In this document: piece after piece, positions 147-56,000 of the stretch | How positions within the stretch are numbered: position 1 is the first letter of the stretch | Layout: the number at the start of each line of letters is the position of its first letter | Source: Octopus bimaculoides | Lineage: Eukaryota | Reading direction: 5' to 3' | DNA length: 64,000 nucleotides | NCBI RefSeq assembly: GCF_001194135.2 | Contig: NC_069001.1 | Span: 18,709,627 to 18,773,626 of the forward strand | Position numbers and translations under genes: made by a program | The notes under the pieces: generated by a model | What the model saw: the letters and a program-made list of their open reading frames with translations, nothing else | Databases searched by the model: none | What the model was told of the DNA's origin: nothing

Positions 147-348
147 CATATCACGTAAGGCTAGAGATGGGAACGATGACTTCCTTTGCAAATGCTATAC
201 GGACAGGAAACTGTGTGTCAATAGCCAGCTGGAAAAGATATTTTCCTGGGCTAAAACAATACTAACATCATCCTTTACAAGACTTCTACATTCTGTTATC
301 ACAAAAATTTTATGTATATATATATATAGATATATAGATATATATATA

Positions 349-686
349 GTGAAGGTGCATGGCTCAGTGGTTAGAGCATCAGATTCACAATCAATAGGTA
401 ATGAGTTTGAATCCCGGACCGGGCTGTGTGTTGTGTTCTTGAACAAAGCACTTTATTTCACGTTGCTCCAGTTCACTCAACTGTAAAAATGAGACGTTGG
501 TGTTAAGCTGCATCAGCCTTTGCCTTTCCCTTGGATAACATCAGTGGTGTAGAGAGAGGTGACTGGTATGCATGGGCAACTATTGGTTTTCCATAAACAA
601 ACTGCCCTGGGCTTGTGCCTCGGAGGGAAACTTTCTCTGTGCAACCCCATGGTCATCCATGACCAAAGGGGATATTTACCTTTACC

Positions 687-690
<4 letters not shown>
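349..690 (+). mobile_element. tRNA-type SINE, family 1
   Basis: tRNA-like head with A-box (TGGCTCAGTGG) and B-box-like (GAGTTTGAATCCC) motifs, followed by a (CA)n tail. Other copies at 52065-52225 and, for the 3' part, 43105-43192. Confidence 0.85.
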
Positions 691-747
<57 letters not shown>

Positions 748-1584
748 ACGCACACACACACAGATGTATATACATTGGAGGAAGCATTTATCAGACTGCA
801 TCCACAGTTTGCAACTGTCATATATGTACAGCCAATGTGGCCAACTGTCACAGTAACAGTGATTGTGCTTGCTGGCAACATTGATAGTAACAATAACATT
901 AACTTGGCCAATGATCATTCCCATGCCAAAAGTGCTGGCAGCAGATTTAATGGTAATGGTAATAATAAAAAATGTTACGAATGACAATATTGACACGATT
1001 CACATTAATATGTTAACAAATATTGGTGTTGTTATAGTACAAATAATAATGTAAATATATATATATATATATTTACATTATTATTTGTACTATAAACTGT
1101 AATAATAATTATCTCAGGGCTAACCTTACTGTCCAAAATATTAATAATCTCTTTGACCATAGTTTAATCTTGGATAATATGATTGGATCTAATGATTTTA
1201 CAGAATTTAGCTTGCTGAAACTACCTGTGTGCAGCAGATTAATATCCCTGCTGCTGATACCTGTAACATTAATGTCCACCTCATGTGTTTTGTAATTGTA
1301 AAAACAAACTTCAATGCCTTGTCCATAATTTATGCCTAACTACAAATAGTATGTATGGGTGTGATATCAATACTAACATGATTACATTTACATTTAGGCT
1401 CAGCTGGAAAAGTATTCAAGAATCAATTATATAATCATATCCATATATTTAAGACTTGTGATAAAGCTAAAATTATGTCATGAAAAAATTGGGTAATTGA
1501 AAGATAAAAATGTTGAGTTCCATATTACCTTATATAAGAGATAAATATAGCTGTAGACTTTGCTGCACAAAATTACTGGATATC

Positions 1585-1935: not shown

Positions 1936-3057
1936 ATATCCTAAAATGTTCTGGTGAGATCCTCAATAACTTTAGAGAACTTAGGGCAAAATGCGCGTAT
2001 CACATTAAAAACATATTTTCATACTTTAAATCTGTTAGCTAAAATGTTCCTGGCTGCCATGCTACTTAGATCTCTTTGCCTGTAAATATTCTCTAAAAGT
2101 ATACTTTAGTTAGATAGACTTCTTCTCATTTCTGTAGTTTATGAATATTCTGATTAATTGTTATGAATAGTATCTCGGTTATAATGTCTTACGTTTAAGC
2201 TGGTTTCAATACATTTCCCTGAGGTGAAGTTTACATTTTTAACATCGCCGATTCCTATGGATCGCATAAATTGTAATTCTTTGAAACATATGTCGGAATA
2301 AAAGTATGCAGTTATAACATGCGTTTACTCCATTCTTTAAATTTATATATATATATAGATAGATAGATAGATAGATATAATATAATATAATATAATATAA
2401 TATAATATAATATAATATAATATAATATATATGTATATATATATATATAAAAGAGTATAAAAGTGATAAATTATTCTGGCAGATACTGACTTATCTCATA
2501 AAATGGTATGGATGCAGGCTACCCACAACAGTCCAATTACATAGTACTCAAGTATAAATAGATGCTGGTACTTGTAAGCTCCACTTGTTGGGTAGTTTCT
2601 TGTTACTATTCAGAACTGCAAATATTCTGTAGAGTATATAATTGAAAAGCAAGAGGAGAGTGGAGATTTATTCTCATCCAAAACTTTTTGGTAAAAAAAG
2701 TTTTCTACAGCATATATAACAATGGCCAACATATGTTTCTACTGCAACAACTACACATTGCTCTGTATGCAATTATGCATTCTAGTCACTGCAATTTCAT
2801 CAAGTGTCCATCACAACGTTTTCAAAGTAAATTAATTCAAACAAGCTTCCTGTGTTGGTATTCAGTTAACGGTTATAGCGTTACTTTTTAAATCAAATTG
2901 AATTCTGGTCCTATAATCACTTCTACACAGAGCAATGTGTAATTGTTGCAGTGGAAACATATGTTGATCATTGTTATATATGCTGAAGAAAACTTTTTAA
3001 TAAAAAGTTTTGAATGTGACTAAATCTCCACTCTCCTCTTCATTTTCAATTATATAT

Positions 3058-6067: not shown

Positions 6068-6315
6068 ATTTAAAGTAAACAGAAAATGGAGAAATATTGA
6101 TCAACAACAATTTACTAACACCAATTATTACTTTTTAATATAAATAGACTGTATCCCATCTAACAGCTGTTTCTGCATCCAATGTTCCATGGTATTGCCA
6201 TTGAAAATTCTGAAAATAATATTAATTTTCAGGATTTTCAATGGCAGTACCATGGAATATTGGAAGCATTAGAAGTTGTTGATCAATATTTCTCCATTTT
6301 CTGCTTACTTTAAAT
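6068..6315. repeat. Foldback of a PLE-type 3' tail
   Basis: Outer arms TTTAAAGTAAACAGAAAATGGAGAAATATTGATCAACAAC and its reverse complement, plus inner arms. The left arm carries the hammerhead 3' half GAAAC-AGCT-GTT on the minus strand (6162-6173). Confidence 0.75.
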
Positions 6316-6774: not shown

Positions 6775-7960
6775 TTGCGAATTAGCACATTCGTGCTTTT
6801 GCAACAGCAGCCAATCTGAGCTGGTAGTGTACCTATAAAATCAGTAGTCATCAGCCCAGAAGTGGAGCACGCCTTTTGGCAGTCAGTCAGGGAAAGACCT
6901 CAAAACCACAACTGTCAATGAACAGATCTCCACAACCATCGGCAAATAGGTCCTACGACTGTCAGCGAACAGAGCTGTATGACCATCAGTGGACAGATGA
7001 CCACAACCGATAGCAACAGATCTTGACATTTCACACCAGCCTTTGTACCAGCAGCTGTTGCCTGTTTGTTTTTCTTACATCCTTAACACTGCAAACTTCT
7101 AACCTACTTGTGCAATTGTGAGTTTTCTTGGCTTCCCTCTGACTCCAACATATCTACGCTCACTTTGCTCAGCACTTGTCAATAATCCCAAATAAATTAC
7201 TATTCTTTATTTACAAAACATGCCTTCTGACATATACGTCATTCCCCGTTATAATGGGACATTGTTACATTCGAACATGTTCCAACCTAAATCGTAACAC
7301 TGGTGACTCGAATGTTGAAATATTTTTGTTCAAGAAATATTCTCACCCCACCAAAAAATATATAAAAATATTTTTTATATATAACAGTGACTAAGCAAAT
7401 GTTTCCATTATGGCTACCTTTCTTCTTCATTGTACTTTAGTTGCACCTTATGTATGCATAGCCATACTCAACGTGCATGTCTTGCCTTGTTTTGGATGAA
7501 TTTTCTTGCTTGTCGCCATGATGTAAAATTCGATTCTACTTCAAGTTATGCCATTTCATTCTTCACTGCACTGGACTTTTTCCTCAACTCACCGAGCTTC
7601 TCCAGAATCGCCACATGAAGAATGACTTCCCTTCACTTGCACCTGTTTAACTCAGGTTTTCAATGCTGGGAAACAGCATCCCTCCTTGAACACTATGTCT
7701 CCAAAGCAAAGCTTTCAGTTGTGGTTAACACATCAGACACTGCAATCAGTGCTGTTTTACAGTCCTTTCATCAGCAAAACTTGCAAACCTCTGACCTCCT
7801 CTGGACTTACTCAAGATAACTTCTCTCAAATTTTCCGTGTGCAAATTCCATACTCACTTGTGCCAACCTCCGTAGATCCTGTCCAAACCATTTCACCTTG
7901 TCCTTTCATACCACTCAATCATCGAGGAGCTGTTTTTGAAGCTTTGCTTCATCTGTCACT
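6775..7960 (+). mobile_element. Deleted Gypsy remnant (LTR-like region, PBS-like site, RNase H and integrase pieces)
   Basis: ...CGTAACA then C-TGGTGAC (7301) resembles an LTR end plus PBS; VVNTSDTAISAVLQ resembles the RNase H motif VDASDTAIGAVLQ; PFIPLNHRGAVFEAL resembles the pre-integrase H2C2 region. The left boundary is approximate. Confidence 0.55.
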
Positions 7961-8356
7961 TCTGCTGCCTCAGTCATGCGATGACTGGTACGTGCGCGAG
8001 TGTTGAACATACCAGTCATCGCATGACTGAGGCAGCATACATAAGGTGCAACTAAAGTACAATGAAGAAGAAAGGTAGCCTTAGTCATATGGCAACTGGC
8101 AGCTTCCATCATAAAGAGCCCAAAAATGACCAGTGCTAAAGATATCCTTCCGCCCTTATTGCCTCATCCAAACTGAATTTGTCAAAGTTAACTGTTACAT
8201 CATGATCATCATTCTTACTAGTTTAATTTTAATTTTTACTTCTACTTCTACATTCCTTTCTTTCTCTCCTTCTCCTTTTCCCTCCTTTTTATATCTCTTA
8301 TATCTATTTATATCTTTTATGTACATATATACATACATATATAAATACATACACAT

Positions 8357-11300
8357 TGTTATAATGTGGATCCTCATCCACTTGTATATTGTTGTCGGCA
8401 CTAATATTCTTGTCACCACTAATATGTTGTGGTGGTATTCTGTGCCTTATTATCTTTGACTCATCTATCGTGCTCTCACTGATAGCTCTGCAAGACAATG
8501 ACTTTGAAACATCTACCTTGATGGTAACTCGAACTCTTATATATCACGTAACTGACACTGATTCCAAGAACTTGTACAATGACTCTACTACTACTACTGA
8601 CCCTCTACAATGACTGAAAGAGTGTACATTTTCACTACAACATCTCCCCTTTTAGTTTTTTTTTTCTTTGGGAAGCAAGTAATTTTATTTTACTTTATTC
8701 ATCCTTCCTCCCTTTTTAGCAGTTTTTTTCCAACTTAATATTTTTTCTTTTTGGTGTCTATTTGTAGGAACTCTGTGTTCTTCCTTTTTCTTCTACTTGT
8801 ACGTATGGGTTCAACCACCTGTAATGGGGTTGGTACCTGGAATGTATCATACAGCCATTCCATTGGTTCTTCCAGTCTGTCTGGTTCATTTTCTATGAAT
8901 CTCTCTAATTGGTTTCTGTGTCTGTTTCCAATACCTTTTCTGCTTCGAATTCCGTACATCATTTTCCTATATACTTTGTGATTTTTCCTTCTTCCAAGTA
9001 CTGTTTTCCAGTTTTATACGACCTCTTCTGAAGAATTTTGGATTGTCTTTTCTGGTACATTTTCTTTCCTTGCCAGGTAACAGTTTATCAAAAACTGATT
9101 TCACCTTCCTCACAAACATCAGTTCTGTTGGTGAACTTCCTGCTGGTGTATTGGGGTTCAGTGTCACCCTGTATACCCTTAGGAATTGCTGTAGAGTGAC
9201 TTCGTCGGTGGCTTCCTTGTTTGCTTTTCTCAAAACTCTTTTAAAAGTATCCACAAAATACTCTACCTGTCCATTTGATCTGGAACAGTAAGGTACTATC
9301 GTTTCATGTTCTATCGTAAACATTTCGCAGAATTTTCTATATTCACTGGACACAAATTGTGTTCCATTATCAGATACAATCATGTCTGGGATGCCAAATC
9401 TTGCGAATAATTTGTGCAAAAATTCATTACCATTGCAGAGGTTGGTCTTTTGCACTTAACAATTTTCAGCCATTTTGTAAAACTGTCAACTATTACTAAG
9501 TAGTAATAATCATTTAATGGACCCGCAAAATCAATGTGTTTTTTTTTGTTTCATTAATGAACTTGCCTTTTGACGCATATCACTTTATCTCCTCCAGAGT
9601 TATTGGTAACTCTCGTACAATGTTCCACATTATGTGTTTAATTTCCCCTTTGGCTCTTAGGGCTGCTATTACTGTGTCCTCAAATGGTTCACCATTTCTG
9701 GGTATTAACCTGGATAAGCCATCAGCATGTTCTAGCTTTTTTGAAGGTAAATATTCCATTGCAAATTGTAGTCTAGTAGTATTGTAAAATTACTATTTTT
9801 AAATCTCACAATGAGAGATATTCAGCAACAGTACTTTGGAGTAAAGATTTTTGCCAACATAACATGGCAGTCCTGGTTTAGGACGAATGTTGCTGTAATT
9901 TAGCCCCAGGAGACATTGTCTCCAGCTGGCTATACGACACGATCTGTGTCCTTGTTCGAAAATATAAGGACACAGATCGTGTCGTATAGCCAGCTGGAGA
10001 TGATGTCTCCTGGGGCTAAATTACAACAACATTCGTCCTAAACCAGGATTGCCATGTTATGTTGGCAAAAATCTTTAGTAGTATTGCTGCAACCTGTATG
10101 TACTGGGATTCCTTTCTTGGATCCCTAAATCATTAGCAACGGGTGATGGTCTGTTTGTAGTCTAAACTGTCTACTGTGTATAAACCTGTGGAACTTTTTT
10201 TATTATGCCAAATATAATCGCCAATGTCTCTTTTCCAATTTGGCTATAATATTTTTCCACTAGCAATAGCATCCTTGATGCATGAGCTATGGCCTTTTGG
10301 CTGCCATCTCCACATTTGTGTAGGAGTATGGCACTTACCCTGTACTCACTAGATTCTGTTGCCAGTATTGTTTCCAACTTTGGATTGAAGTATGTAAGCG
10401 ACAAGTCTGAAGTTAACATGCTTTTTGTTCCTCAAATGCCTTCTGGCATTTTTCTTACCAAAACCATTTGACATCCTTTTTTAATAGCTTGTTTAGTGGA
10501 ACCCTTGTGTTGTGTATGTTCAGGATATATACTTGATAGTAGTTTACCAAGCCTAAGAATGCTTGTGACAATTTGACGTTCATTGGGGGAGGCATATTCC
10601 ATATTGCTGTTGCCCTTGATGAGTCTGGCCTTCGTCCCCTTTCATCAGTTACTTGACCCAAATATTTGATTTTTTTCATCAAAAATTCACACTTTTTCTC
10701 TGTTAGTCTAAACCCGAATTCATTTATTTTTCTGAATACTTTTTTAAAATGTTCGAAGTGTTGCTCTACTGACTCGTTCTTTATGAAAATATCATTGAGA
10801 TAAATGATAACAAAGTCACAATCATTTAACATTGCATCCATCACTTGTTGGAATATGGTAGGTGCCACTTTTATTCCAAAAAGAAGCTGCTTGAATTTAT
10901 ACATGGTGTGTGTTGATTGTTAAAAGGTGTACACAATCTTCCTCTACCTGTATCTGTAGATAGGCTTCTGAGAAGTCTAACCTCGAGAAAATTTTTCCTC
11001 CATTCAGTTTTGAGAACACTTCTTCAGGGTTTGGTAATGGATAGTTGTGTTCGAGTAAACAATAATTTAATCCAGTTGAAAAGTCTGCACACACTCTTAG
11101 TTTATTATTATTTTTTTTTTTACATAAACTGTCAGGGCTGCCCAGCTAGACTTTTTAGTCTTTCTAGATCTTTATTGACCTGGTCCAGTGCCACAAACAG
11201 CACATTCCGTTTGGGCCTAAAAACAGGTGTTGCCTTTTCTTTACGATGATCCTCACTTTTGTTTTAGTGCAACAGCCTAATCCTTCCAAAAAAACATTTG

Positions 11301-13135
11301 TAAACAATTGTCTCAGTTGTGCGACTTCATTCAAACTTTTAACCATGCCGACTACATTTTCTCAGAGAACACTAATGGGAGTATCCCACATTTTAAATAA
11401 CGCCATGCATTCTGTACCAAATAGGTTTAGTGATTTTTTTCAGCACATAAATGATTGTCCTTTTCATTTCACCTCAACAAGTTACATTGCAAATACATTC
11501 GTTCCTGTAACACTATATGCTACTTTATTTGATTTAAATAATTTTGGCTTGCCAATTTGTCACCATGTTTCTTCATTTATGATAGTGATGTCACTACCCA
11601 TGTCTAATTGCATTTTGACACTAGTGGTTTCGATTCCCACCTTGATGAATTTTCTGTTTGTTGTACAAATATTTTTCTCTAGTGACAAACTATTTATTTT
11701 TTGTTGTTTAGTCCAATTTTTCATCATCTTAGTTCTGCAGTGTGATTTAATGTGTCCTGTATTCCCACAAGGAAAATACTTCACCTTTTTGAATGGACAC
11801 TCTTTTCTCAGGTGCCCACCACCGCATACCATACATGGGTTTATCTCCTTTGTGTTTTTGTGAAACACTTTATCCGTCTTCCAACTTTTTTGCACTGGTT
11901 TTATCTGTAAACAATCTCTGCATTGGATTTCTTCTGTGTCTTGCCTTACTTTTAATATCCTATTGCACTCTTCTGACAGTTCCTGCAGAGTTATATCCTG
12001 GTTCATTTCCAGCTTTGCAAGAATTTCCATTCTGACTTCCATGTCCTTTTTAGTAGTAAGTCCCTGAGCAAAAATCAAGTACTTGAACAAGTCTGAAGTT
12101 AGTTTATCCCATTTAAATCTCTCACACTCTCTGTTCACTCGATCCACATATGTGGTAAAGTCTTCGTTATCGCTTTTCTCAATGTTCAAACACTTCCAAT
12201 GTGTATTGAACAACAATGTTTTTCATCAAACATCCTACAAAAAATGTCAATTGTGTCTGTAACATTTATGTCAGAAACTTTTAGACAATATAAAGTTACA
12301 GTATTCCTCATGCTCTATCATTGCCAGTTTCCTCTGAATTAGATGCGTTTTCATTTTGTTTGTCCAGTCTTGGCATTCTTTTCCGAAAATTTGTTCAAAT
12401 CTTCAGTAATATGACTTGAAAGTGATTCCTTCTTCCAGATCATATTTAAATTTATTTATTGAATTTGCTACATGGTCTGGCAAAAATGTATTTTCCGGTT
12501 TTGTTATCAATTTCATTAGTTGTAGCATTTGTTGCTGCAACATTTGTTGTTGTTCTTTGGGTTATTGTTGTTGTTGCTGTTTTTGCAACTCAACTATTTC
12601 CCCTAACAAGTTTTCCATAATTTTATGGGTTTTTCGTAAAATATGTACAGCAAAAATGTTTGTTACCCCTTGAGTTTTTTCATTTCTCCATGTGAAGAAT
12701 TTTTCAGCATCGTCCACATGAATTGTTTATTTTCTCGTGAAAAAATTTTTTTTCTTTGCAACACTGTCTGCACGAATCATTTATATCCTCATCGCCACTG
12801 TTAAAATGTGGATCCTCGTCTATTTGTATATTGTTGTCAGCACTGTAATATTCTTGTCACCACTAATATGTTGTGGTGGTATTCTGTGCCTTATTATCTT
12901 TGACTCATCTATTGTGCTATCACTGCCAGCTCTGCAAGACAATGACCTTGAAACATCTACCTTGATAGTAGCTTGAACGTGTATATATCATGTAACTGAC
13001 ACTGACTCCAACTGAGAACTCGTACAATGACTCTACTACTACTAACCCTCTACAATGACTGACTGTTTGACTTTATAGTGGCTAGTTCATACCACTTTGT
13101 CACATGGGAAAGAATGCATTATTTTCACTACAGCA
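8357..13135 (-). mobile_element. Ty3/Gypsy LTR retrotransposon (Mag-like), structurally complete, ORF decayed
   Basis: LTRs 8357-8642 and 12799-13135 (TG...CA); TSD CACAT at 8352-8356 and 13136-13140; PPT adjacent to 8643; PBS TGGCGATGAGGAT adjacent to 12798; order gag CCHC knuckles, protease (LDMGSDIT), RT (YLNDI), RNase H, integrase, with frameshifts and stops. Confidence 0.95.
9785..10075. mobile_element. Hairpin insertion with 11-bp TSD inside the Gypsy pol
   Basis: TAGTAGTATTG at 9774-9784 and 10076-10086; 112-bp near-perfect arms 9842-9953 and 9966-10077. Confidence 0.85.
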
Positions 13136-13369
13136 CACATATATATGTGTGTTTGTATGTATGTATGTGTGTGTATATACACACAAACATTTATACATAT
13201 ATATATTGTGTGTTATGTGTGTATGTCATTCTTTTTTCTCTTCCTCTCCTCCTCCATTTCTCTCTCTCTCTCTCTCAATTGTCTCTTAATCACAAGCTTC
13301 TTCACCCTTCTCCTCACCGGTCCTATCCTTCTTTAATAAATCAATAGATTCTAATTTAGATATAAACCA

Positions 13370-13830
13370 ACACCACCATTGCCACCATCAACAATTTACT
13401 ATTGTCTCACCACCACCATTACATTACCACAGATACTACAGTCACTAACACTAGCACAGCATCAGATCAACTTTAGCTTCATGCCACCACCACCACCACC
13501 ATCCACACCATCACTACCACTAACACCACCACCACCACCACCAAAATACAACCATTTCAGCATAGCACCATCATTAACTTCATCCCTATCATCACATAAT
13601 TTCCACCACAACTACCACACCACACCCACTGCCACATCACCACCAATATTACCATCATCTCCTTCACACTCACAACTGTTTTACCTCTGTCATTACCTCC
13701 ACCATCATAAATCAATTGATAAGACTAAATTGGTTACAAAGTAGAAGCTATTTTCATTCCAAATGATTTTTGGTGGTGGCTGTGGTGATGAGTAGAGATG
13801 GTGGTAGTGGTGTTAAATGGGGAGGTGGCT
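13370..13830. repeat. (CAC/CAT)n-rich low-complexity tract
   Basis: Directly visible composition; explains the Pro/His-rich ORF. Confidence 0.8.
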
Positions 13831-14089
13831 GACCTTTGACCTCCAGTACTCTGTACTTAATTAAAAAGAGTGAAGTTTGCATTAGTAGAGTTAGGGTAAG
13901 TATAGTTGTCCTAGGTCCAAACTGTAAATGAAGCCATGGTATTTAAACATATGTGAGTCCTTATGTATGTATGTCATTGTTCAGTTTTATTTCAAGATTT
14001 CTTGCCAATTGAGAAAGAGCCGGTTTTTAATCTAGATCCAAAGTTCCTTCATTGGAATTTCAACATCAACAACAGGGTATTTTTGCTTG

Positions 14090-14122
<33 letters not shown>

Positions 14123-14209
14123 GAAGATTTGTATGTTTTAAGTATGTATTCTCATGCATATAGTTGCATATCTAGACATGCTCTTATATATTTAAATGAT
14201 AAACTTCTG

Positions 14210-14704
14210 GAAAATTTTACAGATTTTTACAGTTCCAGTGATGGATTGGAGTATGATAGAGCTCCATACCACAGAGTGTGGGCAACACAACCAACAGAGT
14301 CTGGTTGATGAAGATGTTGCCATATTGAAGGATTGGCCAGCTCAGAGCCCTGACTTAAATATCATTGAGTAAATGTGGACAGAGCTAAAAAGAAGAGTTC
14401 ATCAGAAGAATCCATGCAATCTTGAAGAGTTGTGGGAGTTCAACCACAGAGAATGGCATCTCATACCTGTGAAGATGGTGAAGGATTTGTATGCATCTCT
14501 TGCCAGGTGCACTGAAGCAATTATTCAAGCTAAGGGCCACATGAAATATTCAATTATTCAACATAAGAACCACATGAAATATTAACAATGAACAGTAACT
14601 TCTTGTACATTATGTAATAAATTTTCATTATAGACATTTTTCTGTTTTAAAACACTGTATCTTGATTGGTTTATGTAAGGTGGCTGAAAACTTTTGCATG
14701 GCCA
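14210..14704 (+). mobile_element. Tc1 transposase 3' fragment with terminal repeat remnant
   Basis: WPAQSPDLNIIE*MWTELKRRV motif; ends in GCTGAAAACTTTTGCA. Confidence 0.8.
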
Positions 14705-15774
14705 TTTTTGGTGGTTGTCTCACATTTTCCTCTCTTATTCAGAACCCCTACTACAAAATATAATGATTAGGCATGGAAATGACTCCAACAGGGCCAATGT
14801 TTCATCTGTAAAAAATGCAATGTGAAACATCCACTTAAAAGTTGGCAATTATGAAAAAGTGGTAGTTGGCCATGGATACTAGAGAGTAACAGCTTATCTT
14901 GATATGCTTATTTTGGTATGTCTCTTCTAAGCAGATTGTTTCATTTTCAAAAATCTCAGGTTAACTTACTTGTGAAACGTACAATTTCAAAGTATGTATC
15001 TATAGGTGTGCGATAGTATGTGTGTGTATACACACACACAAATAGGCCAATTTTTATCATCATTATTTTAAATTCTATTTTCCCATTCTTGTATGGGTCA
15101 GATGAGCATGCTGGGACAGTTTTCTGTGGCCAGATGACCTTCCTGTTGCCAAATCTTGCTTGTTTCTAAGTAAGGTAATAGTCTCCCTTTCTGTCAACAA
15201 TAAATAGACTGGAAATATGAGGAGAACTGGAAAGAAACAATACTGTTCCACAAAGATTGTTATGTCCAGAAGCACATACATGTTTTTGTGGTGCACTGCA
15301 AGCAAATGGCACTATTAGAGAAGACAGTGTTTACAATCATGTAATGAGCACATGCATACAAGGAAATATGAACTCAGACACACAAAGGAAAGAGAGAGAG
15401 AAAAGGAGAGACAGAGAGGCAGTCTTCTTTCAGTTTTTGTGCTTCACATATAGATCCATAAGCTTTGGTTGACCTGGGCTGTATTAGAAGGCACTTGCCA
15501 AAGGTGCCACGTAGTGGAAATGCCTGAAATAAACTCCGTGTGCATGTGTGTAAAAATAATATAACATGAGGATGGAAGATAGCAGACTTTAACAACATTT
15601 GTTTCTGCATTGCATACCTGATATCATCCATCCTTGCGTTATATTATTCTTATATTAATCTCATGCAAAGAGGACTTCCAAATGTCTATCCCTACTGTAG
15701 GATAACATGAGGTAACCAAATAATGGGATAAGAGCTCTTAAATGCACATTACAAGATTCTTACTCAAATTATAC

Positions 15775-20759: not shown

Positions 20760-23700
20760 TCCTTAGCCATGGTGAGAGCAGCCTATCTAGGAGAAGGAAA
20801 ATACTTATATAAAACCAGGTTTGTGGTTGCTGATGGTCTCCTTATCTGGTGTGCACTATCAGAATCTACTTACTCATAGGGCAGTCTGGACTCTAGCTTT
20901 TGAGCAACTAGACTAGAAGAAGGCCACTCTGATTTCAAATCTGTAATTGATTTAGCATCTGACATGTAATACACTGTGCACCAGTACGGGTAAATGCTTT
21001 TGTGATGGACAAGCAATGACCACTATAAACAAAACCATGTGCAGGTGGTTCAGTAAAATAGCATCAGCAAATATCACCATGTTTTGTGCCCCCTCCCTAA
21101 ATTCTATGATGATGAAGGGAACAGGTGAAGGATGTCACTGGAAGTTCTTGGCCTGAATTTCACACATAGGTGGTGAAAGGTAGTTAGCTGCTTTACTTCT
21201 GTGAGTAATTGTGTAATTCATGTTCTCCTTTCACGACAAAGTAGCCCTGTTTAAGATGGCATTGCTTTCCTCCTCGGGAGGAGGGGGTTAAGAAAATGCA
21301 GCCTAAAAATTGTTTACTTGCATTACTCCTTGTTATTAAGTGCAAATGACTGGGCATCCAAACCTGCACCAGAAGATTAAGCAAGTTGGAAAAAAAACCT
21401 TTTCATTCCATCTTGGAATGTGCAAATTCTTCAGGACAGCAAAAAAAAAAAAAAATAGAATATAGGACGCTTTAGTTGCCCGTGTCTTGAAATAAAAAAA
21501 AAACATTGGAACAGCAGCTTTTTCAGAAACCAGACTAGCAAACTGTGATCAGCTACAGGAAGTTGATGGTGGATACACTTTTCTCTGGATGGGTAACCCT
21601 CAGGAAGTAGAGAAAGAGGCAGGGGTTGGGTTTGCTATTTGGAATGACTTAGAGAAATGTTTTAAAATCTTTGCCAGTTGGCATTAGTGAAAGACTCATG
21701 TCATTGCATATCTGCATTGGCAAAAATAATATGCAACTATTTTCAGCTGCTATGCTCGAACCATGAACTCAAATGAAGTAGTCAAAGAGCAGTTCTACTC
21801 TGAGCTACATAGCCAGTTGAAAGTTGATTGCATCCATCATAAACTTCTCTTTGGTAATTTCAGTGCATGTGTAGGTTGTGATACATCCATATGGGGTGGC
21901 ATAATAGGGAAGCTTGGGGTTGGCAAGGCAAACTCAAATGGCCATCCGCTGCTGTCACTTTGCAGTGAGTTTTGATTACCAATATTATTTTCCAACTCCC
22001 CAACCACCACAAAACTACCTGCAAGCATCCCCAATCAAACTATTATCACCTCATTGATTACATAATTGCGAAGTCTTCCATGATGGAAGATGTCCAAGTA
22101 ACACATTCTGTCTCCATTCGGGAGTGTTGGTCTGACCATAGACTGATATGATGAAAGGTGAATTTTACTATCTGCATTCCTTTTCATAACAATCACACTC
22201 AACCAACTCAAAAAGTGGATGTGTCAAAGCTGAGGAACGACGACAATTTAAACTCATTTCAAACAATCTGTGACAACAAACTTACTGGTATCTCAGACAA
22301 CACAGATATTGAATCAGCATGGTTTGCTTTTAAAAATGCTGTATTTAAGTCATCTTGAGAAATACTTGGATATGTTAAGAGGAAGCACCAAGATTGGTTC
22401 AACTCAAATGATCCAAACATCTCTCCTCTATTGGACAATAATGCACAAATGCCGCTGTCAATGGATGTCAAACAAAAATAATGCAACAAAATGCAATGAG
22501 TTTTAAAAGGTCAGAAATACATGCCAATCCCAACTGAGGCAAATGAAATACACATGGTGGTGAAAAAATGCACAAGAGTTGCAGGATGCCACAGACAGAT
22601 GTGACTTCAAGCCATTCTATCAGAATTTAAAGGGTCTTTTTGGACCTGTGTTTGTTGGCTCAACTCCCATACTTTCAATTGAGAGTAATCTTTTCACAGA
22701 CAAAAAGGGGATCATGAAGCATTGGGCAGAGCATTTTTCAAACGTTCTGAATATGGACTCGATTGTTGATGAAGAACTGTCAGTTACTCCATCAAATGCT
22801 GAGATAAAAAAAGGCCATAAAACAGCTCACAAATGGAAAGTCATCTTGGAATCATGGCATATCAGCTGAGATATATAAATGTGGATGCAATCTTCTGCAG
22901 AACAAATTATGTTAACTCTTCTCCTTAATCTGGAAATTAGGATCAGTCCCACAAGAGTTCAAAGAAGCTTCTATTGTCCATCTTTATAAGCACAAAGGCA
23001 ACAAATGTGAATGTGACAACCAGAGAGGTTATCTCCCTTTTATGTGTTGCTGGGAAGATTCTTGGAAGGGTTATCTTAAACAGACTACTTGATGCCCTTG
23101 TCAGCTTAGTGTTGCCTGAATCTCAGCATGGCTTTTGGACTGGTAGAGGTACAGTGAACATGATTTTCAGCCAAAGTCAACTGCAGAAAAAGGCTCATGA
23201 GCACAACCAAGACGTTTTTGTCACCTTTGTAGATCTAACTAAAGCTTTCAACACCATATATAGGGATGCTCTTTGGGTTGTCTTTAGAAAGCTAGGTGTT
23301 CCTAAAAAGATACTCAATGACATTATTTCTTTCCATCAGGGGATGATGGTTTCTGTTAGATCTAGGAGGGAAGTGTCTGATTCATTCACAGTCTCAAATA
23401 GGACAAAACAAGGCTGTGTTCTTGCACCACTCATATTTGCTTTGTATTTCTCCACCATGTTGGAAACAGTATTCAAGGGTGTTAAAGAGAGAGTAAAGTT
23501 TGAGTACATAACTGGTGGTGGCTTGTTCAACCAACAGCACTTCAAAATAAAAACTAAGACTTTGGTGCAAGCAGTTCAAGGTTTGCTCTTTGCAGATGAT
23601 TGTGCACTTGTAGCACACACTCTTGAGGACATGCAATGGATTCTAAACCACTTCTAATGTGCATCGACAGCTTTTGGTTTGACCATCAGCATCAAGAAAA

Positions 23701-24523: not shown

Positions 24524-25446
24524 AGTAAATCCACAGTAAATCCATAGTAAATCCATAGTAAATCCACAGTAAATCCACAGTAAATCCACAGTAAATCCAT
24601 AGTAAATCCATAGTAAATCCATAGTAAATCCATAGTAAATCCATAGTAAATCCACAAGCACATAAGTAAACTGAGTCCTCAACCTGTTCCCTTNNNNNNN
24701 NNNNNNNNNNNNNNNNNNNNNNNNNNNNNNNNNNNNNNNNNNNNNNNNNNNNNNNNNNNNNNNNNNNNNNNNNNNNNNNNNNNNNNNNNNNNNNNNNNNN
24801 NNNNNNNNNNNNNNNNNNNNNNNNNNNNNNNNNNNNNNNNNNNNNNNNNNNNNNNNNNNNNNNNNNNNNNNNNNNNNNNNNNNNNNNNNNNNNNNNNNNN
24901 NNNNNNNNNNNNNNNNNNNNNNNNNNNNNNNNNNNNNNNNNNNNNNNNNNNNNNNNNNNNNNNNNNNNNNNNNNNNNNNNNNNNNNNNNNNNNNNNNNNN
25001 NNNNNNNNNNNNNNNNNNNNNNNNNNNNNNNNNNNNNNNNNNNNNNNNNNNNNNNNNNNNNNNNNNNNNNNNNNNNNNNNNNNNNNNNNNNNNNNNNNNN
25101 NNNNNNNNNNNNNNNNNNNNNNNNNNNNNNNNNNNNNNNNNNNNNNNNNNNNNNNNNNNNNNNNNNNNNNNNNNNNNNNNNNNNNNNNNNNNNNNNNNNN
25201 NNNNNNNNNNNNNNNNNNNNNNNNNNNNNNNNNNNNNNNNNNNNNNNNNNNNNNNNNNNNNNNNNNNNNNNNNNNNNCCACAGTAAATCCACAGTAAATC
25301 CATAGTAAATCCATAGTAAATCCACAGTAAATCCACAGTAAATCCATAGTAAATCCATAGTAAATCCACAGTAAATCCACAGTAAATCCATAGTAAATCC
25401 ATAGTAAATCCATAGTAAATCCATAGTAAATCCATAGTAAATCCAC
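24524..25446 (+). repeat. 11-bp tandem repeat (AGTAAATCCAY)n split by an N gap
   Basis: 12 units at 24524-24655; further units at 25278-25446; gap at 24694-25277. Confidence 0.95.
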
Positions 25447-32123: not shown

Positions 32124-33210
32124 TACTGGAGTTGGACAAAATAATGGAAACACCTAGCATCATAGCATCATAATTTTGAAATATTTATAAAACCATCAAA
32201 AGCTTGTTCATTTTTATGTTTTTTGATTTATTATTAGTGTTGCTTAATATGTTTTGCAAAAACTGCTGTTTCTTTTCAGATATCATTAGAAAAAGGTAAT
32301 TAAAATTCAATTAAAATGACAGATCTATCAGACTTTCAAAGAGGTCAAATTGTTGGTGCTCATATGGCAGGCGCTAGCATAATGAAAACAGCCGAAATGT
32401 TTTTGTATCAAGAAGTACTGTCTTGAAAGTAATGACACCCTTTGAGAAAGAGGGAAAATCCTCCTTGTTGAAACAAAACTCCGGAAGAAAACCAAAACTT
32501 TCAGATAGGGACAGTCGGAGTCTTATGCAAATTGTTAGAAAGGATCTCAAAAGTACAGCTCCCAAAATTACCGCAAAGCTTAATGATCACCTCGAGAACC
32601 CAGTTTCCACAAAAACTGTTCACTGGCAGCTGCACAAAGCCAGATTTCACAGGAGGGCTGCAATCAGAAAACTACTACTTTCAAAAACAAATGTTGCAAG
32701 GCATTTAGAGTGGAGTAAAAACCTACAGAATTTGTCCCTAGAGCAGTGGAAGAATGTTATTTTCTCGGATAAATTATCCTTTACCTTATTTCCAACCACC
32801 GGCCAAGCATACATGTGGAGACAGCCAAAAGAAGCATTTGATCCAGACTGCCTTCTTCCAACCGTTAAACATGGAGGAGGATCTGTGATGATCTGGGGGG
32901 CTATATCTTGTAAATCTGCTGGCTCATTGGTTTCCCTTCATATCAGAATTAATAGTCAAGACTATTTAAGCATTTTATCTGATGAAATTCATCCTTTGGT
33001 TGCAGAACTGTTTCCAGAGGGAAACACAATCTTTCAGGATGATAATGCACCAATTCACACAGCTAAAGTTGTTACTGAATGACACAAGGAACATTCTAGT
33101 GAAGTTGAACATCTTATGTGGCCACCACAGCCCCCAGATCTCAATATTATTGAACATTTATGGTGCCTTTTTGAAAAAACAAGTAAGGAGTCGATATCCT
33201 CCACCATGTT
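32124..33210 (+). mobile_element. Tc1 element, 3'-truncated
   Basis: TA followed by a TIR-like start; MTDLSDFQRGQIVGA N-terminus; FSDK, FQDDNAPIH and WPPQPPDLNIIEHLW motifs. Confidence 0.9.
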
Positions 33211-43519: not shown

Positions 43520-45056
43520 CATTTTAATACTTAGCCAGGAGTGAAGCAGAAAGGAAGTTTGCTAATGTTCTGCAGTGTGAGGACCAGCAGCTTGAAGTGT
43601 TTTGGTTTGGAAGACAGTGTGCCAGGGAAAATTATGATATGGTAGGAGAGAAGTGTGTTTGCACGGATGATGGTTCATTTGCAGTTAGTGATTCTGAAAT
43701 GAAAGAGGCTTAGAAGTGCCACTATGAAAGGCTACTAAATGTAGAGCATTCACGGGAGAAGGAGAGTCTGCCTAATGTTGATCAAATAGAGGGACCAGCA
43801 ATCCAAATAGTCCATAGTGTTGTAGACAAAGCCATGAANNNNNNNNNNNNNNNNNNNNNNNNNNNNNNNNNNNNNNNNNNNNNNNNNNNNNNNNNNNNNN
43901 NNNNNNNNNGCTGAGATGCTTAAAATATCTGGCAGTGTGGGTCATGGTCTAGTCACCCGCATAGTTAGTCAGGTGGTACATGAAGGAGTCATACCTAATG
44001 ACTGGTGTAGCAACACCATAGTCAACTGCTACAAAAGTCAAGGTGATGTCTTAAATAGAAATAATTACAGACATCACCTTGTTGGATCAGGTGATGAAAG
44101 TCATGGAGAGGGTCATAGCCCAACTAATTAGGGAAAGAGTTAGTCTAGATGAGGTGCAGTTTGGTTTTGTGCCAGGTAGAAGCACCACTGATGCTATATT
44201 TCTGGTAAGGCACCTGCAGGAATAGTACATAGCCAAAGATAAACCTTTGTACTTAGCTTTTGTTGACAAGGAGAATGCCTTTGACAGGGTCCTCCAATCA
44301 CTTACCTGGTGGTCAATGTGGAAACTAGGGATGGACGAGTGGTTGGTGAGAACTGTACAAGCCATATATAGGGATGTAGTCAGTGAAGTGAGGGTTGGCA
44401 ATGAGTATAACGATGAATTCAGGGTACAAGTAGGGGTTTACCAAGGATCAGTCCTCGCACCCCTCTTGTTCACCATAGTCCTCCAGGCAATAACAGAGGA
44501 ATTTAGGATGGGCTGCCCTTGGGAACTCCTCTAAATGCCTTCAGACAGATGGCCCTGCTCAATCTGTAGGAAAAGTGTAGGTAGAAATTCCATAAGATGT
44601 ATCTGGTGCAAGCTATAAACACAAAAGAAGTGCAGCAATATCAGGGGAAGGTTAACTGAGAAAATAGTTTTTTGTGTGGAAGTTGCATAGATACAATAAA
44701 CACTAAAAATGTACAGAAAATAGACTCCATCAAATGCCAGTGGGGTAAGCTAGAGATAGTTGATAGCTTCTGTTATCTAGGTGACTAAATCAGTAGCAGA
44801 GGTGGGTGCTTTGCAAGTGTAGCTGCAAGAATAAGAATAGACTGGGCAAAGTTCAGAGAGCTTCTACCTCTGTTGGCAACAAAGGGCCTCTCAGTCTGAG
44901 TGAAAGGCAGACTGTATGATGCCTGTGTGCAAATAGCTATGCTACACAGCAGTGAAACCTGAACTGTGATCGCCAAGGACATATGTAGACTTGTAAAAAA
45001 TGAAGCTAGCATAATTCATTGGATGTGCAATGTCAGTGTGCATGTACAACAGTGTG
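43520..45056 (+). mobile_element. RTE LINE fragments
   Basis: LAFVDKENAFDRV and VGVYQGSVLAPLLF RT motifs; N gap at 43839-43909. Confidence 0.88.
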
Positions 45057-45360
45057 CATGTACAATAATTTAGCAGATTTATATTACGTACCGTGTGTTT
45101 TCAAGCAATCTTTCAGGCTCAGTGCATACTGTTAGACATATTTGAAAACCAGGATGCTAGTCTATGACAAAACACGAGAAAAGAAATGAGAAGAAAAATG
45201 CATCAACCTTCTTTGCATTTTTCTGGGTTTTTTTCTCATGTTCTTTCATAGACCAGCATCCAGGTTTTCAAATCCATCTAACATTATGCACTGACTCAGA
45301 AAGACTGCTTGGAGACACATGGTATGTTATATAAATCTGCCAAATTATTGTATCATTGCA
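45057..45360. repeat. Foldback element
   Basis: Arms of about 130 bp (TACAATAATTTAGCAGATTTATAT... / ...ATATAAATCTGCCAAATTATTGTA). Confidence 0.8.
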
Positions 45361-55534: not shown

Positions 55535-55544
55535 TATATAAAAG

Positions 55545-55812
55545 AAATTGAGTTGACAAAGGAGTAAGCAATTAGCTTATGAACTTCATTAGCTTGCAGC
55601 TGTTTCTGCTATAAGATGCAATGGACTCATAGATGAGTATCTGAGTATCACCTTATAACTTCATCGGAGCTTCACACACAAAGAGGCTCTGATAAAGCTA
55701 TAAGGTGATATTCATGCACTCAACTATGAGTCCACTGCATCTTATAGCAGAAACAGTTGTAAGCTAATGAAGTTCATAAGATAATTGTTTACACTTTTGT
55801 CAACTCAATTTT
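55545..55812. repeat. Foldback carrying two head-to-head hammerhead-like motifs (55591-55671 minus; 55685-55765 plus)
   Basis: Arms of about 128 bp; consensus AGCT-CTGATGA-AGCTATAAG...CTTATAGC-A-GAAAC-AGCT-GTA-AGCT. Confidence 0.8.
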
Positions 55813-56000
55813 TTATTACTGCTTTGTACAAGACTAATACTTTGTTCTTTGTTGCCACTGATAATAATAATAACAAGAGCACTCAGTGTGTGTGAACCTC
55901 TGCCAAGATAACACCAACATCCTCTCAATGATTAGCTGGAGATGATTTTTAAAATGAGAATATCTGACTAAAACATGTATATATATATATATATATATAT

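What the first reader, a model, noticed from the sequence alone, without database searches (positions are those of the whole stretch)
9774..10086. 291-bp hairpin element inserted as a unit with an 11-bp TSD into the Gypsy pol
The pol frame (..GSKKGIPVHT..ILL|DYN..MEYLPSKKLEHADGLSRL) is split, with TAGTAGTATTG duplicated on both sides. The insert is a palindrome with 112-bp arms plus a one-sided extension of about 57 bp, so it is not a symmetric TIR MITE. The long-arm/short-inverted-arm layout and odd-length TSD fit a target-primed retro-insertion with 5' inversion, but no hammerhead core is visible. It is the only foldback here where insertion as one unit is demonstrated.
Basis: partly seen in the sequence, partly recalled or inferred. 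Interest (0 to 1): 0.7.

Follow-up and report, generated by a model that had tools for sequence, protein, structure and literature searches.

The report
Hairpin insert with one-sided tail in Gypsy
A 291-base hairpin-shaped mobile element really did land as one piece in a dead Gypsy retrotransposon, and its lopsided shape fits best a known retroelement insertion pattern (Penelope-like), so it is probably an ordinary, if neat, example and not a new kind of element.

Summary
TAGTAGTATTG occurs only twice in the window, at 9774-9784 and 10076-10086, flanking a 291-bp insert. The insert is a 57-nt unique stretch, a 112-nt arm, a 12-nt spacer and a 112-nt inverted arm (4 mismatches, all transitions). 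Removing 302 bp puts both Gypsy pol flanks back into one frame for all 8 related pols tested.

New points: both arms end in TA. A distant relative of the arm (about 64% identical) lies at 159-311. It stops at the same outer end, lacks the 57-nt stretch, and sits next to a (TA)n tract. No hammerhead or other Rfam family is present.

Best reading (about 0.5): a target-primed retro-insertion that laid the same roughly 112-nt 3' segment down twice, head to head, with the 57 nt as a 3' "tail" kept on one arm only. That is the published Penelope-like element architecture.

Rivals: a TA-flanked Tc1/mariner foldback MITE that landed beside an older 57-bp insert; a Mutator/Foldback-like element with one odd end; a retroposon that carries the hairpin in its RNA.

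No other copies could be fetched, because the source genome is not in any searchable collection, so the mechanism stays unproven. Interest is modest.

The parts
9774..9784 (.). Left copy of the 11-bp target-site duplication TAGTAGTATTG (pol sequence)
   Evidence: Exact direct repeat. Only two copies in the window. It lies exactly where pol homology is interrupted.
9785..9841 (-). 57-nt one-sided extension U. In the retro model it is the reverse complement of a 3' 'tail' that follows the arm in the template RNA
   Evidence: Not part of the palindrome. No relative elsewhere in the window. No significant similarity to the arm. Absent downstream of the related copy at 159-311.
9842..9953 (-). Left arm, an inverted copy of the repeat unit. 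Its outermost bases are TA
   Evidence: Inverted repeat I1 (the same pair is I6 in the whole-window list), 112 nt, 96% complementary. Mismatches at 9870, 9893, 9917 and 9918 are all transitions.
9954..9965 (.). Head-to-head junction or loop: 12 nt, or 8 nt if the pair 9955/9964 is counted. It contains TTCGAA
9966..10075 (+). Right arm, a direct copy of the repeat unit. It ends ...GGCAAAAATCTT and abuts the right TSD copy without the 57-nt extension
   Evidence: The complementarity runs 2 nt (TA) into the TSD copy.
10076..10086 (.). Right copy of the 11-bp target-site duplication
159..311 (+). Old, diverged relative of the arm. The arm-like part is about 196-311 and ends ...CACAAAAATTTT. About 40 nt upstream weakly resemble the loop and inner left arm. 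There is no outer left arm and no U. It abuts a (TA)n tract
   Evidence: Single-sequence nhmmer with the right arm gives E = 4e-5. Smith-Waterman score is 86 against a background maximum of 41. Identity is about 64%. The upstream anchored test gives p = 0.007. There is nothing further upstream and no tail downstream.
8354..13062 (-). Host: a decayed Ty3/Gypsy element with LTRs at 8354-8617 and 12796-13062. The insert sits in the RNase H-integrase linker of pol
   Evidence: LTR pair is 89% identical over 270 bp. ORF fragments for gag, RT, RNase H and integrase appear.

Best explanation
The 291 bp are one target-primed (RNA-mediated) insertion of the 3' end of a short or heavily 5'-truncated retroelement.

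Inferred sequence of events:
- The pol target was cut on both strands with an 11-nt stagger.
- The 3'-terminal roughly 112 nt of the template were copied twice and ended up head to head. This happened either by priming from both cut strands or by the cDNA folding back on itself.
- On the right, reverse transcription began at an internal site (...AAAAATCTT/TA). On the left it began 57 nt further 3', so that arm keeps a 'tail' (U is its reverse complement).
- Filling in the stagger produced the 11-bp duplication.

This is the architecture described for Penelope-like elements: strong 5' truncation, an adjacent inverted 5'-truncated copy, an extension on one end only, and short TSDs.

Shown: unit insertion, the TSD, the head-to-head geometry, the one-sided extension, and a second family member that ends at the tail-less site. 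Inferred: the RNA intermediate, the enzyme, and that the tail is contiguous with the arm in the source.
For: - The 11-bp TSD and frame restoration after removing 302 bp show one insertion-bounded unit.
- The two arms face each other with their inner ends, and the extra 57 nt sit at the outer end of only one arm.
- A second, old copy at 159-311 shares the arm. It stops at the same outer end without the 57 nt and is cut short on the other side, which is the 'constant 3' end, variable 5' end' pattern. It lies next to a (TA)n tract.
- A SINE in the same window has a 9-bp TSD (312-320 and 764-772), so TSDs of this size are made by retro-insertion in this genome.
- An 11-bp TSD fits no DNA transposon superfamily except Mutator (own knowledge).
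- Published Penelope-like features: 5' truncation, an adjacent inverted 5'-truncated copy, and a 30-40-bp tail often on one end only (PMC8557442). TSDs of 8-10 bp, palindromes at the inverted junction and self-priming (PMC3846280). The endonuclease cuts and extends both strands, and reverse transcription starts at two internal sites with the tail between them (PMC11167929).
- cDNA snap-back and extra-template 5' junctions are documented for R2-type target-primed insertion (PMC11371274).
Against: - No RT or GIY-YIG ORF is linked to the arms. None was seen among 10 window ORFs scanned.
- There is no hammerhead motif, which canonical Penelope-like elements have. Naiad and Chlamys types lack it.
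- The extension is 57 nt, not 30-40.
- There is no poly(A) or microsatellite tail.
- Both arms stop at the same inner point, which needs a short template or snap-back.
- The palindrome is bounded by TA on both sides, like the TA-flanked foldbacks common in this window.
- Only one distant relative (about 64% identity, E = 4e-5) supports the family-level argument.
- No other copies could be retrieved.
Confidence: 0.5

Rival explanations
1. Two separate events. First, a 57-bp fragment (for example a very short 5'-truncated retro-insert) entered pol and made the 11-bp TSD. Later, a 232-bp Tc1/mariner-type foldback MITE (TA|AAGATTTTTGCC...GGCAAAAATCTT|TA) inserted into the TA at the junction between that fragment and its right TSD copy.
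For: - Both arms end in TA.
- 4 of 14 foldbacks in the window start with TA, against roughly 9% expected from my rough dinucleotide estimate.
- A Tc1-type transposase remnant is present at 32378-33079.
- The relative at 159-311 also ends ...TTTTA.
- Near-perfect long inverted repeats are typical of MITEs.
Against: - The MITE would have to hit exactly the boundary of a rare short insert. My rough estimate is 1e-4 to 1e-3 per MITE, given about 5,000 TA sites in the window.
- The 57 nt match nothing else in the window.
- The relative has lost one arm, which needs an extra deletion.
- No autonomous element with these ends is in the window.
Confidence: 0.15
2. A non-autonomous Mutator/Foldback-type DNA transposon. 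It would have long foldback inverted repeats and a 9-11-bp TSD, with the left end carrying 57 nt of non-inverted terminal sequence.
For: - The TSD of 11 bp (or 9 bp, GTAGTATTG, if the terminal TA belongs to the element) lies in the Mutator range.
- The inverted repeats are long.
- Tm1 Mutator/Foldback elements have foldback TIRs, 8-10-bp TSDs and short asymmetric motifs outside the inverted repeat (PMC3169594).
- The two termini share TAAA(G)ATT, but the anchored test gives only p = 0.05.
Against: - The known asymmetric end motifs are about 7 bp, not 57.
- The arms contain no tandem subrepeats of the FB/Tm1 type (one search finds none there).
- There is no transposase link.
- The truncated relative fits 5' truncation better than a DNA-element deletion.
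Confidence: 0.13
3. The hairpin is inherited, not made at insertion. A non-autonomous retroposon family would have RNA of the form 5'-U-arm-loop-arm-3', be copied through by a LINE or Penelope-like RT, and be 5'-truncated like a SINE.
For: - The relative at 159-311 seems to retain the loop and about 26-40 nt of the inner left arm (p = 0.007) together with the full right arm. A 5'-truncated copy of a hairpin-bearing master would look like this.
- The sub-hairpin GGAGAC..GTCTCC in the arm is GGAAAA..TTTTCC in the relative, which is two compensatory pair changes.
- The TSD is of retro type.
Against: - I know of no retroposon family with a 114-bp perfect stem.
- T5 runs in U and in the arm argue against pol III transcription.
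- The evidence rests on one distant relative, and the relative's own arms no longer pair.
Confidence: 0.12
4. Not a transposition at all. A staggered break in pol was repaired with templated filler DNA copied from elsewhere, including a foldback, or an older element excised and left its TSD copies plus filler.
For: The 57 nt have no family in the window. This Gypsy copy is 18 nt shorter than its relatives within about 30 nt of the site, which hints at local damage.
Against: An exact 11-bp duplication with clean boundaries is not the usual end-joining outcome. The right end of the insert coincides with the natural end of a repeat family.
Confidence: 0.05

Closest known systems
Penelope-like element (PLE) insertion architecture: pseudo-LTR, adjacent inverted 5'-truncated copy and one-sided 'tail'
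   Same: Head-to-head inverted pair, an extension on the outer end of one arm only, a short TSD (8-10 bp reported, 11 here), strong 5' truncation, and a relative next to a microsatellite (PMC8557442, PMC3846280, PMC11167929).
   Different: No RT/GIY-YIG ORF and no hammerhead were found. The arms are only 112 nt. The extension is 57 nt, not 30-40. Both arms are cut at the same point.
cDNA snap-back and extra-template 5' junctions in R2-type target-primed reverse transcription
   Same: An antisense copy of the cDNA joined to its 5' end, sometimes after full-length synthesis, plus foreign sequence added by template jumping (PMC11371274).
   Different: Those are engineered insertions at rDNA. Here the 57 nt would have to be an unrelated RNA, and the enzyme is unknown.
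L1 twin priming (5' inversion)
   Same: A target-primed insertion with an inverted 5' part and a TSD.
   Different: In twin priming the inverted part comes from a more 5' region of the RNA and the insert ends in poly(A) (own knowledge). Here the same segment appears twice and there is no poly(A).
Tc1/mariner-derived foldback MITEs (Stowaway-like), TA target
   Same: A 232-bp near-perfect palindrome bounded by TA on both sides. Similar TA-bounded foldbacks and a Tc1-type transposase remnant are in the same window.
   Different: The mobile unit defined by the TSD includes 57 extra nt on one side and is flanked by 11 bp, not 2.
Mutator/Foldback elements (FB, Tm1)
   Same: Foldback inverted repeats, a 9-11-bp TSD, and tolerated short non-inverted end motifs (PMC3169594).
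   Different: There are no tandem subrepeats in the arms, the asymmetry is 57 nt on one side only, and there is no transposase link.
Retrozymes and hammerhead-bearing repeats; TE-derived miRNA hairpins
   Same: Small, non-coding, highly structured repeats. Rfam miRNA models give sub-threshold hits to the hairpin tip.
   Different: No hammerhead at E <= 10. All miRNA hits are far below gathering scores (35-51 bits against 72-114) and occur on both strands, as any perfect hairpin would give.

Membership tests
Penelope-like elements | RT plus GIY-YIG endonuclease ORF, or sequence identity of the non-autonomous copy to the 3' end or pLTR of such an element | not testable with these tools
   The source genome is not in any searchable collection. 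Ten window ORFs gave only LINE-type RVT_1 and Tc1 HTH hits.
Penelope-like elements | Adjacent inverted 5'-truncated copy forming a head-to-head inverted repeat | tested here: met
   Arms 9842-9953 and 9966-10077 have their inner ends facing each other.
Penelope-like elements | Optional 30-40-bp 'tail' at the outer (3') end of only one arm | tested here: inconclusive
   A one-sided outer extension exists (9785-9841), but it is 57 nt. Its contiguity with the arm in a source element could not be checked.
Penelope-like elements | Hammerhead ribozyme in the pLTR (canonical clades) | tested here: not met
   No hammerhead at E <= 10 in 9600-10300. No Rfam hit at gathering score in the window. Naiad and Chlamys clades also lack it (PMC8557442).
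Penelope-like elements | Short TSD of variable length | tested here: met
   One 11-bp TSD was seen. Variability among copies was not testable.
Tc1/mariner MITE | TA duplication directly flanking terminal inverted repeats | tested here: inconclusive
   TA is present at both arm ends. However, the right TA is part of the 11-bp repeat and the left TA abuts U, not pol.
Tc1/mariner MITE | The unit bounded by the duplication is the TIR-to-TIR element | tested here: not met
   The duplication is 11 bp and encloses 57 extra nt on one side.
Mutator/Foldback | 9-11-bp TSD | tested here: met
   11 bp, or 9 bp plus a shared TA.
Mutator/Foldback | Inverted repeats at, or within a few bp of, both termini | tested here: not met
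   The left terminus is 57 nt away from the inverted repeat. Similarity between the two termini gives p = 0.05 only.
L1-type twin priming | Poly(A) at the 3' junction, and an inverted part taken from a region 5' of the direct part | tested here: not met
   No A-tail at either end. The two parts are the same segment.
Rfam miRNA families (mir-5595, mir-4536 and others) | Score at or above the family's gathering threshold | tested here: not met
   35-51 bits against thresholds of 72-114, with hits on both strands.

The most novel reading that the evidence does not exclude
The family is a non-autonomous retroposon whose RNA itself carries a roughly 114-bp perfect hairpin (U-arm-loop-arm). It would be copied through by a reverse transcriptase and 5'-truncated like a SINE. 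That would make it a 'retro-MITE' that seeds ready-made long hairpin RNA loci, and it would mean some foldbacks annotated as MITEs in this genome are RNA-derived.
Probability: 0.12. Interest if true: 0.6.

Novelty: new member of a known kind. Interest (0 to 1): 0.3.

Why it matters
If the retro reading is right, some MITE-looking perfect foldbacks in this repeat-rich animal genome are made by retroelement insertion, not by DNA transposases. The Penelope-like tail and inverted-copy signature points that way.

This affects how such repeats are classified. Penelope-like elements are routinely missed by annotation pipelines (PMC8557442). It also affects how hairpin small-RNA sources and short-read assembly problems are interpreted.

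As a single locus, it mainly provides a clean, datable example. The arms are 96% identical, while the host LTRs are 89% identical.

Tried and rejected
Searches for other copies, all empty:
- A degenerate pattern scan of metagenome contigs gave 26 loci, all chance matches of 14-20 nt.
- A 30-mer scan of GTDB genomes and IMG/VR gave 0 hits.
- A six-frame translation of the element plus the relative, searched as one protein query, scored nothing at E <= 10.
- Exact-protein look-ups of three window ORFs found nothing on record.
- The best pol homologues are only 54-65% identical. One fetched contig (L027) shares only Gypsy sequence at about 66% identity, so the species is not in the collections.

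Ideas tested and dropped:
- The 57 nt as a degenerate repeat of the arm: p about 0.5.
- The 57 nt as related to the 53-nt one-sided piece in the foldback at 6068-6315: p = 0.03, post hoc.
- A TSD around the relative: none convincing.
- Outer left arm or U upstream of the relative: none.
- A tail downstream of the relative: none.
- ADAR editing before reverse transcription as the source of the all-transition mismatches. At the one site the relative can polarise (10049), the derived change is C to T, so this is not supported.
- miRNA family membership: sub-threshold generic hairpin hits.
- A pre-existing 11-bp tandem duplication in pol with a TA-type insertion: possible on paper, but it needs an extra event with no evidence.

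The nhmmer E-value of 4e-28 for the relative is circular, because the relative was in the model. The valid figure is 4e-5.

Full report
**What is there**

The window is AT-rich (36% G+C), has N gaps, and is packed with repeats. Between about 8354 and 13062, on the minus strand, lies a decayed Ty3/Gypsy element. Its LTRs are at 8354-8617 and 12796-13062 and are 89% identical over 270 bp. Fragments of gag, RT, RNase H and integrase are present, with many stops and frameshifts.

Inside its RNase H-integrase linker sits the reported insert. The layout is:
- TAGTAGTATTG at 9774-9784;
- 291 bp at 9785-10075;
- TAGTAGTATTG again at 10076-10086.

That 11-mer occurs nowhere else in the window. The insert consists of:
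- 57 nt without a partner (9785-9841, called U here);
- an arm at 9842-9953;
- 12 nt of spacer;
- the inverted arm at 9966-10077.

The arms are 112 nt each with four mismatches, all transitions. A further G.T and one more pair would make them 114 nt with an 8-nt loop. The fold is far beyond chance, at -216 kcal/mol and z = -29.5.

**Is it an insertion as a unit?**

Yes, in the sense that everything between the two 11-mers is foreign to pol and one 11-mer is extra.
- With the real sequence, tblastn matches of eight related Gypsy pols all stop at the insert, and the two flanks are in different frames.
- After deleting 302 bp (insert plus one 11-mer), each relative gives one match in one frame across the junction.
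AAILLDYN, followed after a 1-nt frameshift by FAMEYLPSKKLEHADGLSRL, lines up with ILLNYNFKMEYLPSKK of the relatives.
- By chance, an exact 11-mer anchored at the end of any of the 14 foldbacks in the window is expected about 0.005 times. For comparison, isolated 10- and 11-mers at 30-450 bp spacing are common somewhere in a 64-kb window. The anchoring and the pol evidence are therefore what count.

One oddity is unexplained. This Gypsy copy is 18 nt shorter than its relatives within about 30 nt of the site.

**New facts about the element**

1. Both arms end in TA. The right TA is the first two bases of the 11-mer.
2. The window holds one more member of the arm's family, at 159-311 on the plus strand.
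   - A single-sequence nhmmer search with the right arm finds it at E = 4e-5.
   - A Smith-Waterman score of 86 compares with at most 41 anywhere else.
   - Identity is about 64%.
   - It runs to ...CACAAAAATTTT, the counterpart of the arm's outer end ...GGCAAAAATCTT. It is followed by ATGTATATA and a (TA)n tract.
   - It has no counterpart of U downstream, even after mentally removing the SINE that later inserted there.
   - Upstream, about 40 nt weakly resemble the loop and inner left arm (anchored test p = 0.007). Beyond that there is nothing.
   - In short, the family shares one end and differs at the other.
3. A local stem in the arm, GGAGAC..GTCTCC, is GGAAAA..TTTTCC in the relative. That is two compensatory pair changes. 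It is suggestive, but it rests on two sequences.
4. U has no relative in the window and no similarity to the arm.
5. Rfam gives no hammerhead and no family above threshold. The miRNA hits are the generic response to a perfect hairpin.

**What it most likely is**

Four features point to an RNA-mediated, target-primed insertion rather than cut-and-paste:
- an 11-bp duplication;
- a constant outer end and a variable opposite end across the family;
- head-to-head geometry;
- an extension on the outer end of one arm only.

The most specific known match is the insertion architecture of Penelope-like elements, as described in three papers:
- Heavy 5' truncation, an inverted 5'-truncated copy directly adjacent, and a 30-40-bp tail often present at one end only (PMC8557442).
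- TSDs of 8-10 bp, palindromes at the inverted junction, and inferred self-priming (PMC3846280).
- In vitro, an endonuclease that cuts and extends both strands, and reverse transcription that starts at two internal sites with the tail being the stretch between them (PMC11167929).

On that model the template ended ...GGCAAAAATCTT-TA-CTCCAAAG...AGTAATTTTA. The right arm was started at the inner site and the left arm at the outer one. Both cDNAs ran to the same 5' point and were joined. The 11-nt stagger was then filled in.

A related variant is ordinary LINE-type priming with cDNA snap-back plus a jump to another template. Both have been documented for R2 proteins (PMC11371274). That variant would make U an unrelated passenger.

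I give the retro class about 0.5. I count separately, at 0.12, the version in which the hairpin is inherited in the RNA.

**Why it is not settled**

- The palindrome is bounded by TA, as are several other foldbacks here (45061-45352, 7409-8083, 2635-3056).
- A Tc1-type transposase remnant lies at 32378-33079.
- A TA-targeting foldback MITE that happened to land exactly at the edge of an older 57-bp insert would give the same sequence. I rate this at 0.15, because the required coincidence is of the order of 1e-4 to 1e-3 per MITE.
- A Mutator/Foldback-type element fits the TSD length and the foldback. Short asymmetric ends are known in that group (Tm1, PMC3169594). But 57 nt on one side only is far from the 7-bp motifs described (0.13).
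- Repair-templated filler is possible but unlikely (0.05).
- Classic L1 twin priming does not fit. The same segment is present twice and there is no poly(A).

**Age**

If the arms were identical at insertion, their 3.6% divergence against 10.7% between the host LTRs places the event well after the Gypsy insertion. The intact TSD agrees with that.

**Limits**

Every attempt to obtain other copies failed, because the source species is not in the searchable collections. TSD spectra, truncation profiles, arm-tail contiguity and linkage to an RT/GIY-YIG ORF are the decisive data, and they could not be collected. The family-level argument rests on one distant relative.

**Housekeeping**

In one search I wrote an unmodified slice of the window (7000-15000), which contains the whole decayed Gypsy copy, to a scratch file as a BLAST query. 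I deleted the file. The only joined sequence I built was the empty site, made from the two flanks.

**Verdict**

It remains unproven against two ordinary DNA-transposon readings. This is a new member of a known kind, of modest interest.

Noticed in passing
window 349-772: A tRNA-like-headed SINE (GTGAAGGTGCATGGCTCAGTGGTTAGAGC...) with an (AC)n tail, flanked by ATGTATATA at 312-320 and 764-772. This looks like a 9-bp TSD. ARAGORN and Rfam do not call the head as a tRNA.
   Followed up: partly
window 6068-6315: A foldback with a one-sided 53-nt piece (6109-6161) inside its left arm, flanked by AACAAC/AACAGC. The right arm is uninterrupted. Its similarity to the 57-nt U is weak (p = 0.03, post hoc).
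   Followed up: partly
window 45061-45352, 7409-8083, 2635-3056, 55542-55814: Further foldbacks with 49-135-nt arms. The first three are bounded by TA on both sides, as Tc1/mariner MITEs are. None shows a long flanking direct repeat.
   Followed up: partly
window 9766-9775 and 10155-10164: A 10-bp direct repeat, TTGTAGTCTA, whose left copy overlaps the left TSD copy by 2 nt. On the minus strand both copies read RLQ in pol-like contexts. The chance expectation is about 0.02, so it is probably coincidence.
   Followed up: partly
window about 9740-10130 (minus strand pol): This Gypsy copy lacks 18 nt of otherwise length-conserved pol sequence (HTANRLQRWGTILLNYNF in relatives) within about 30 nt of the insertion site. 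Whether this accompanied the insertion is unknown.
   Followed up: partly
window 9990-10020 and 226-250: The local stem GGAGAC..GTCTCC inside TAGCC...GGCTA in the arm is GGAAAA..TTTTCC in the distant relative. That is two compensatory pair changes. The 13-mer ATAGCCAGCTGGA is identical in both despite about 64% overall identity.
   Followed up: partly
window 24524-24654 and 25278-25445: Arrays of an 11-bp satellite (AGTAAATCCAT) on both sides of an N gap. The satellite is probably longer than assembled.
   Followed up: no
window 22941-23654, 44226-44531, 32378-33079: Two LINE reverse-transcriptase fragments (RVT_1) and a Tc1-type transposase remnant (HTH_Tnp_Tc3_2). Long inverted repeats nearby at 29219-29415/31829-32025 and 33697-33860/35108-35266 were not assigned to elements.
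   Followed up: partly
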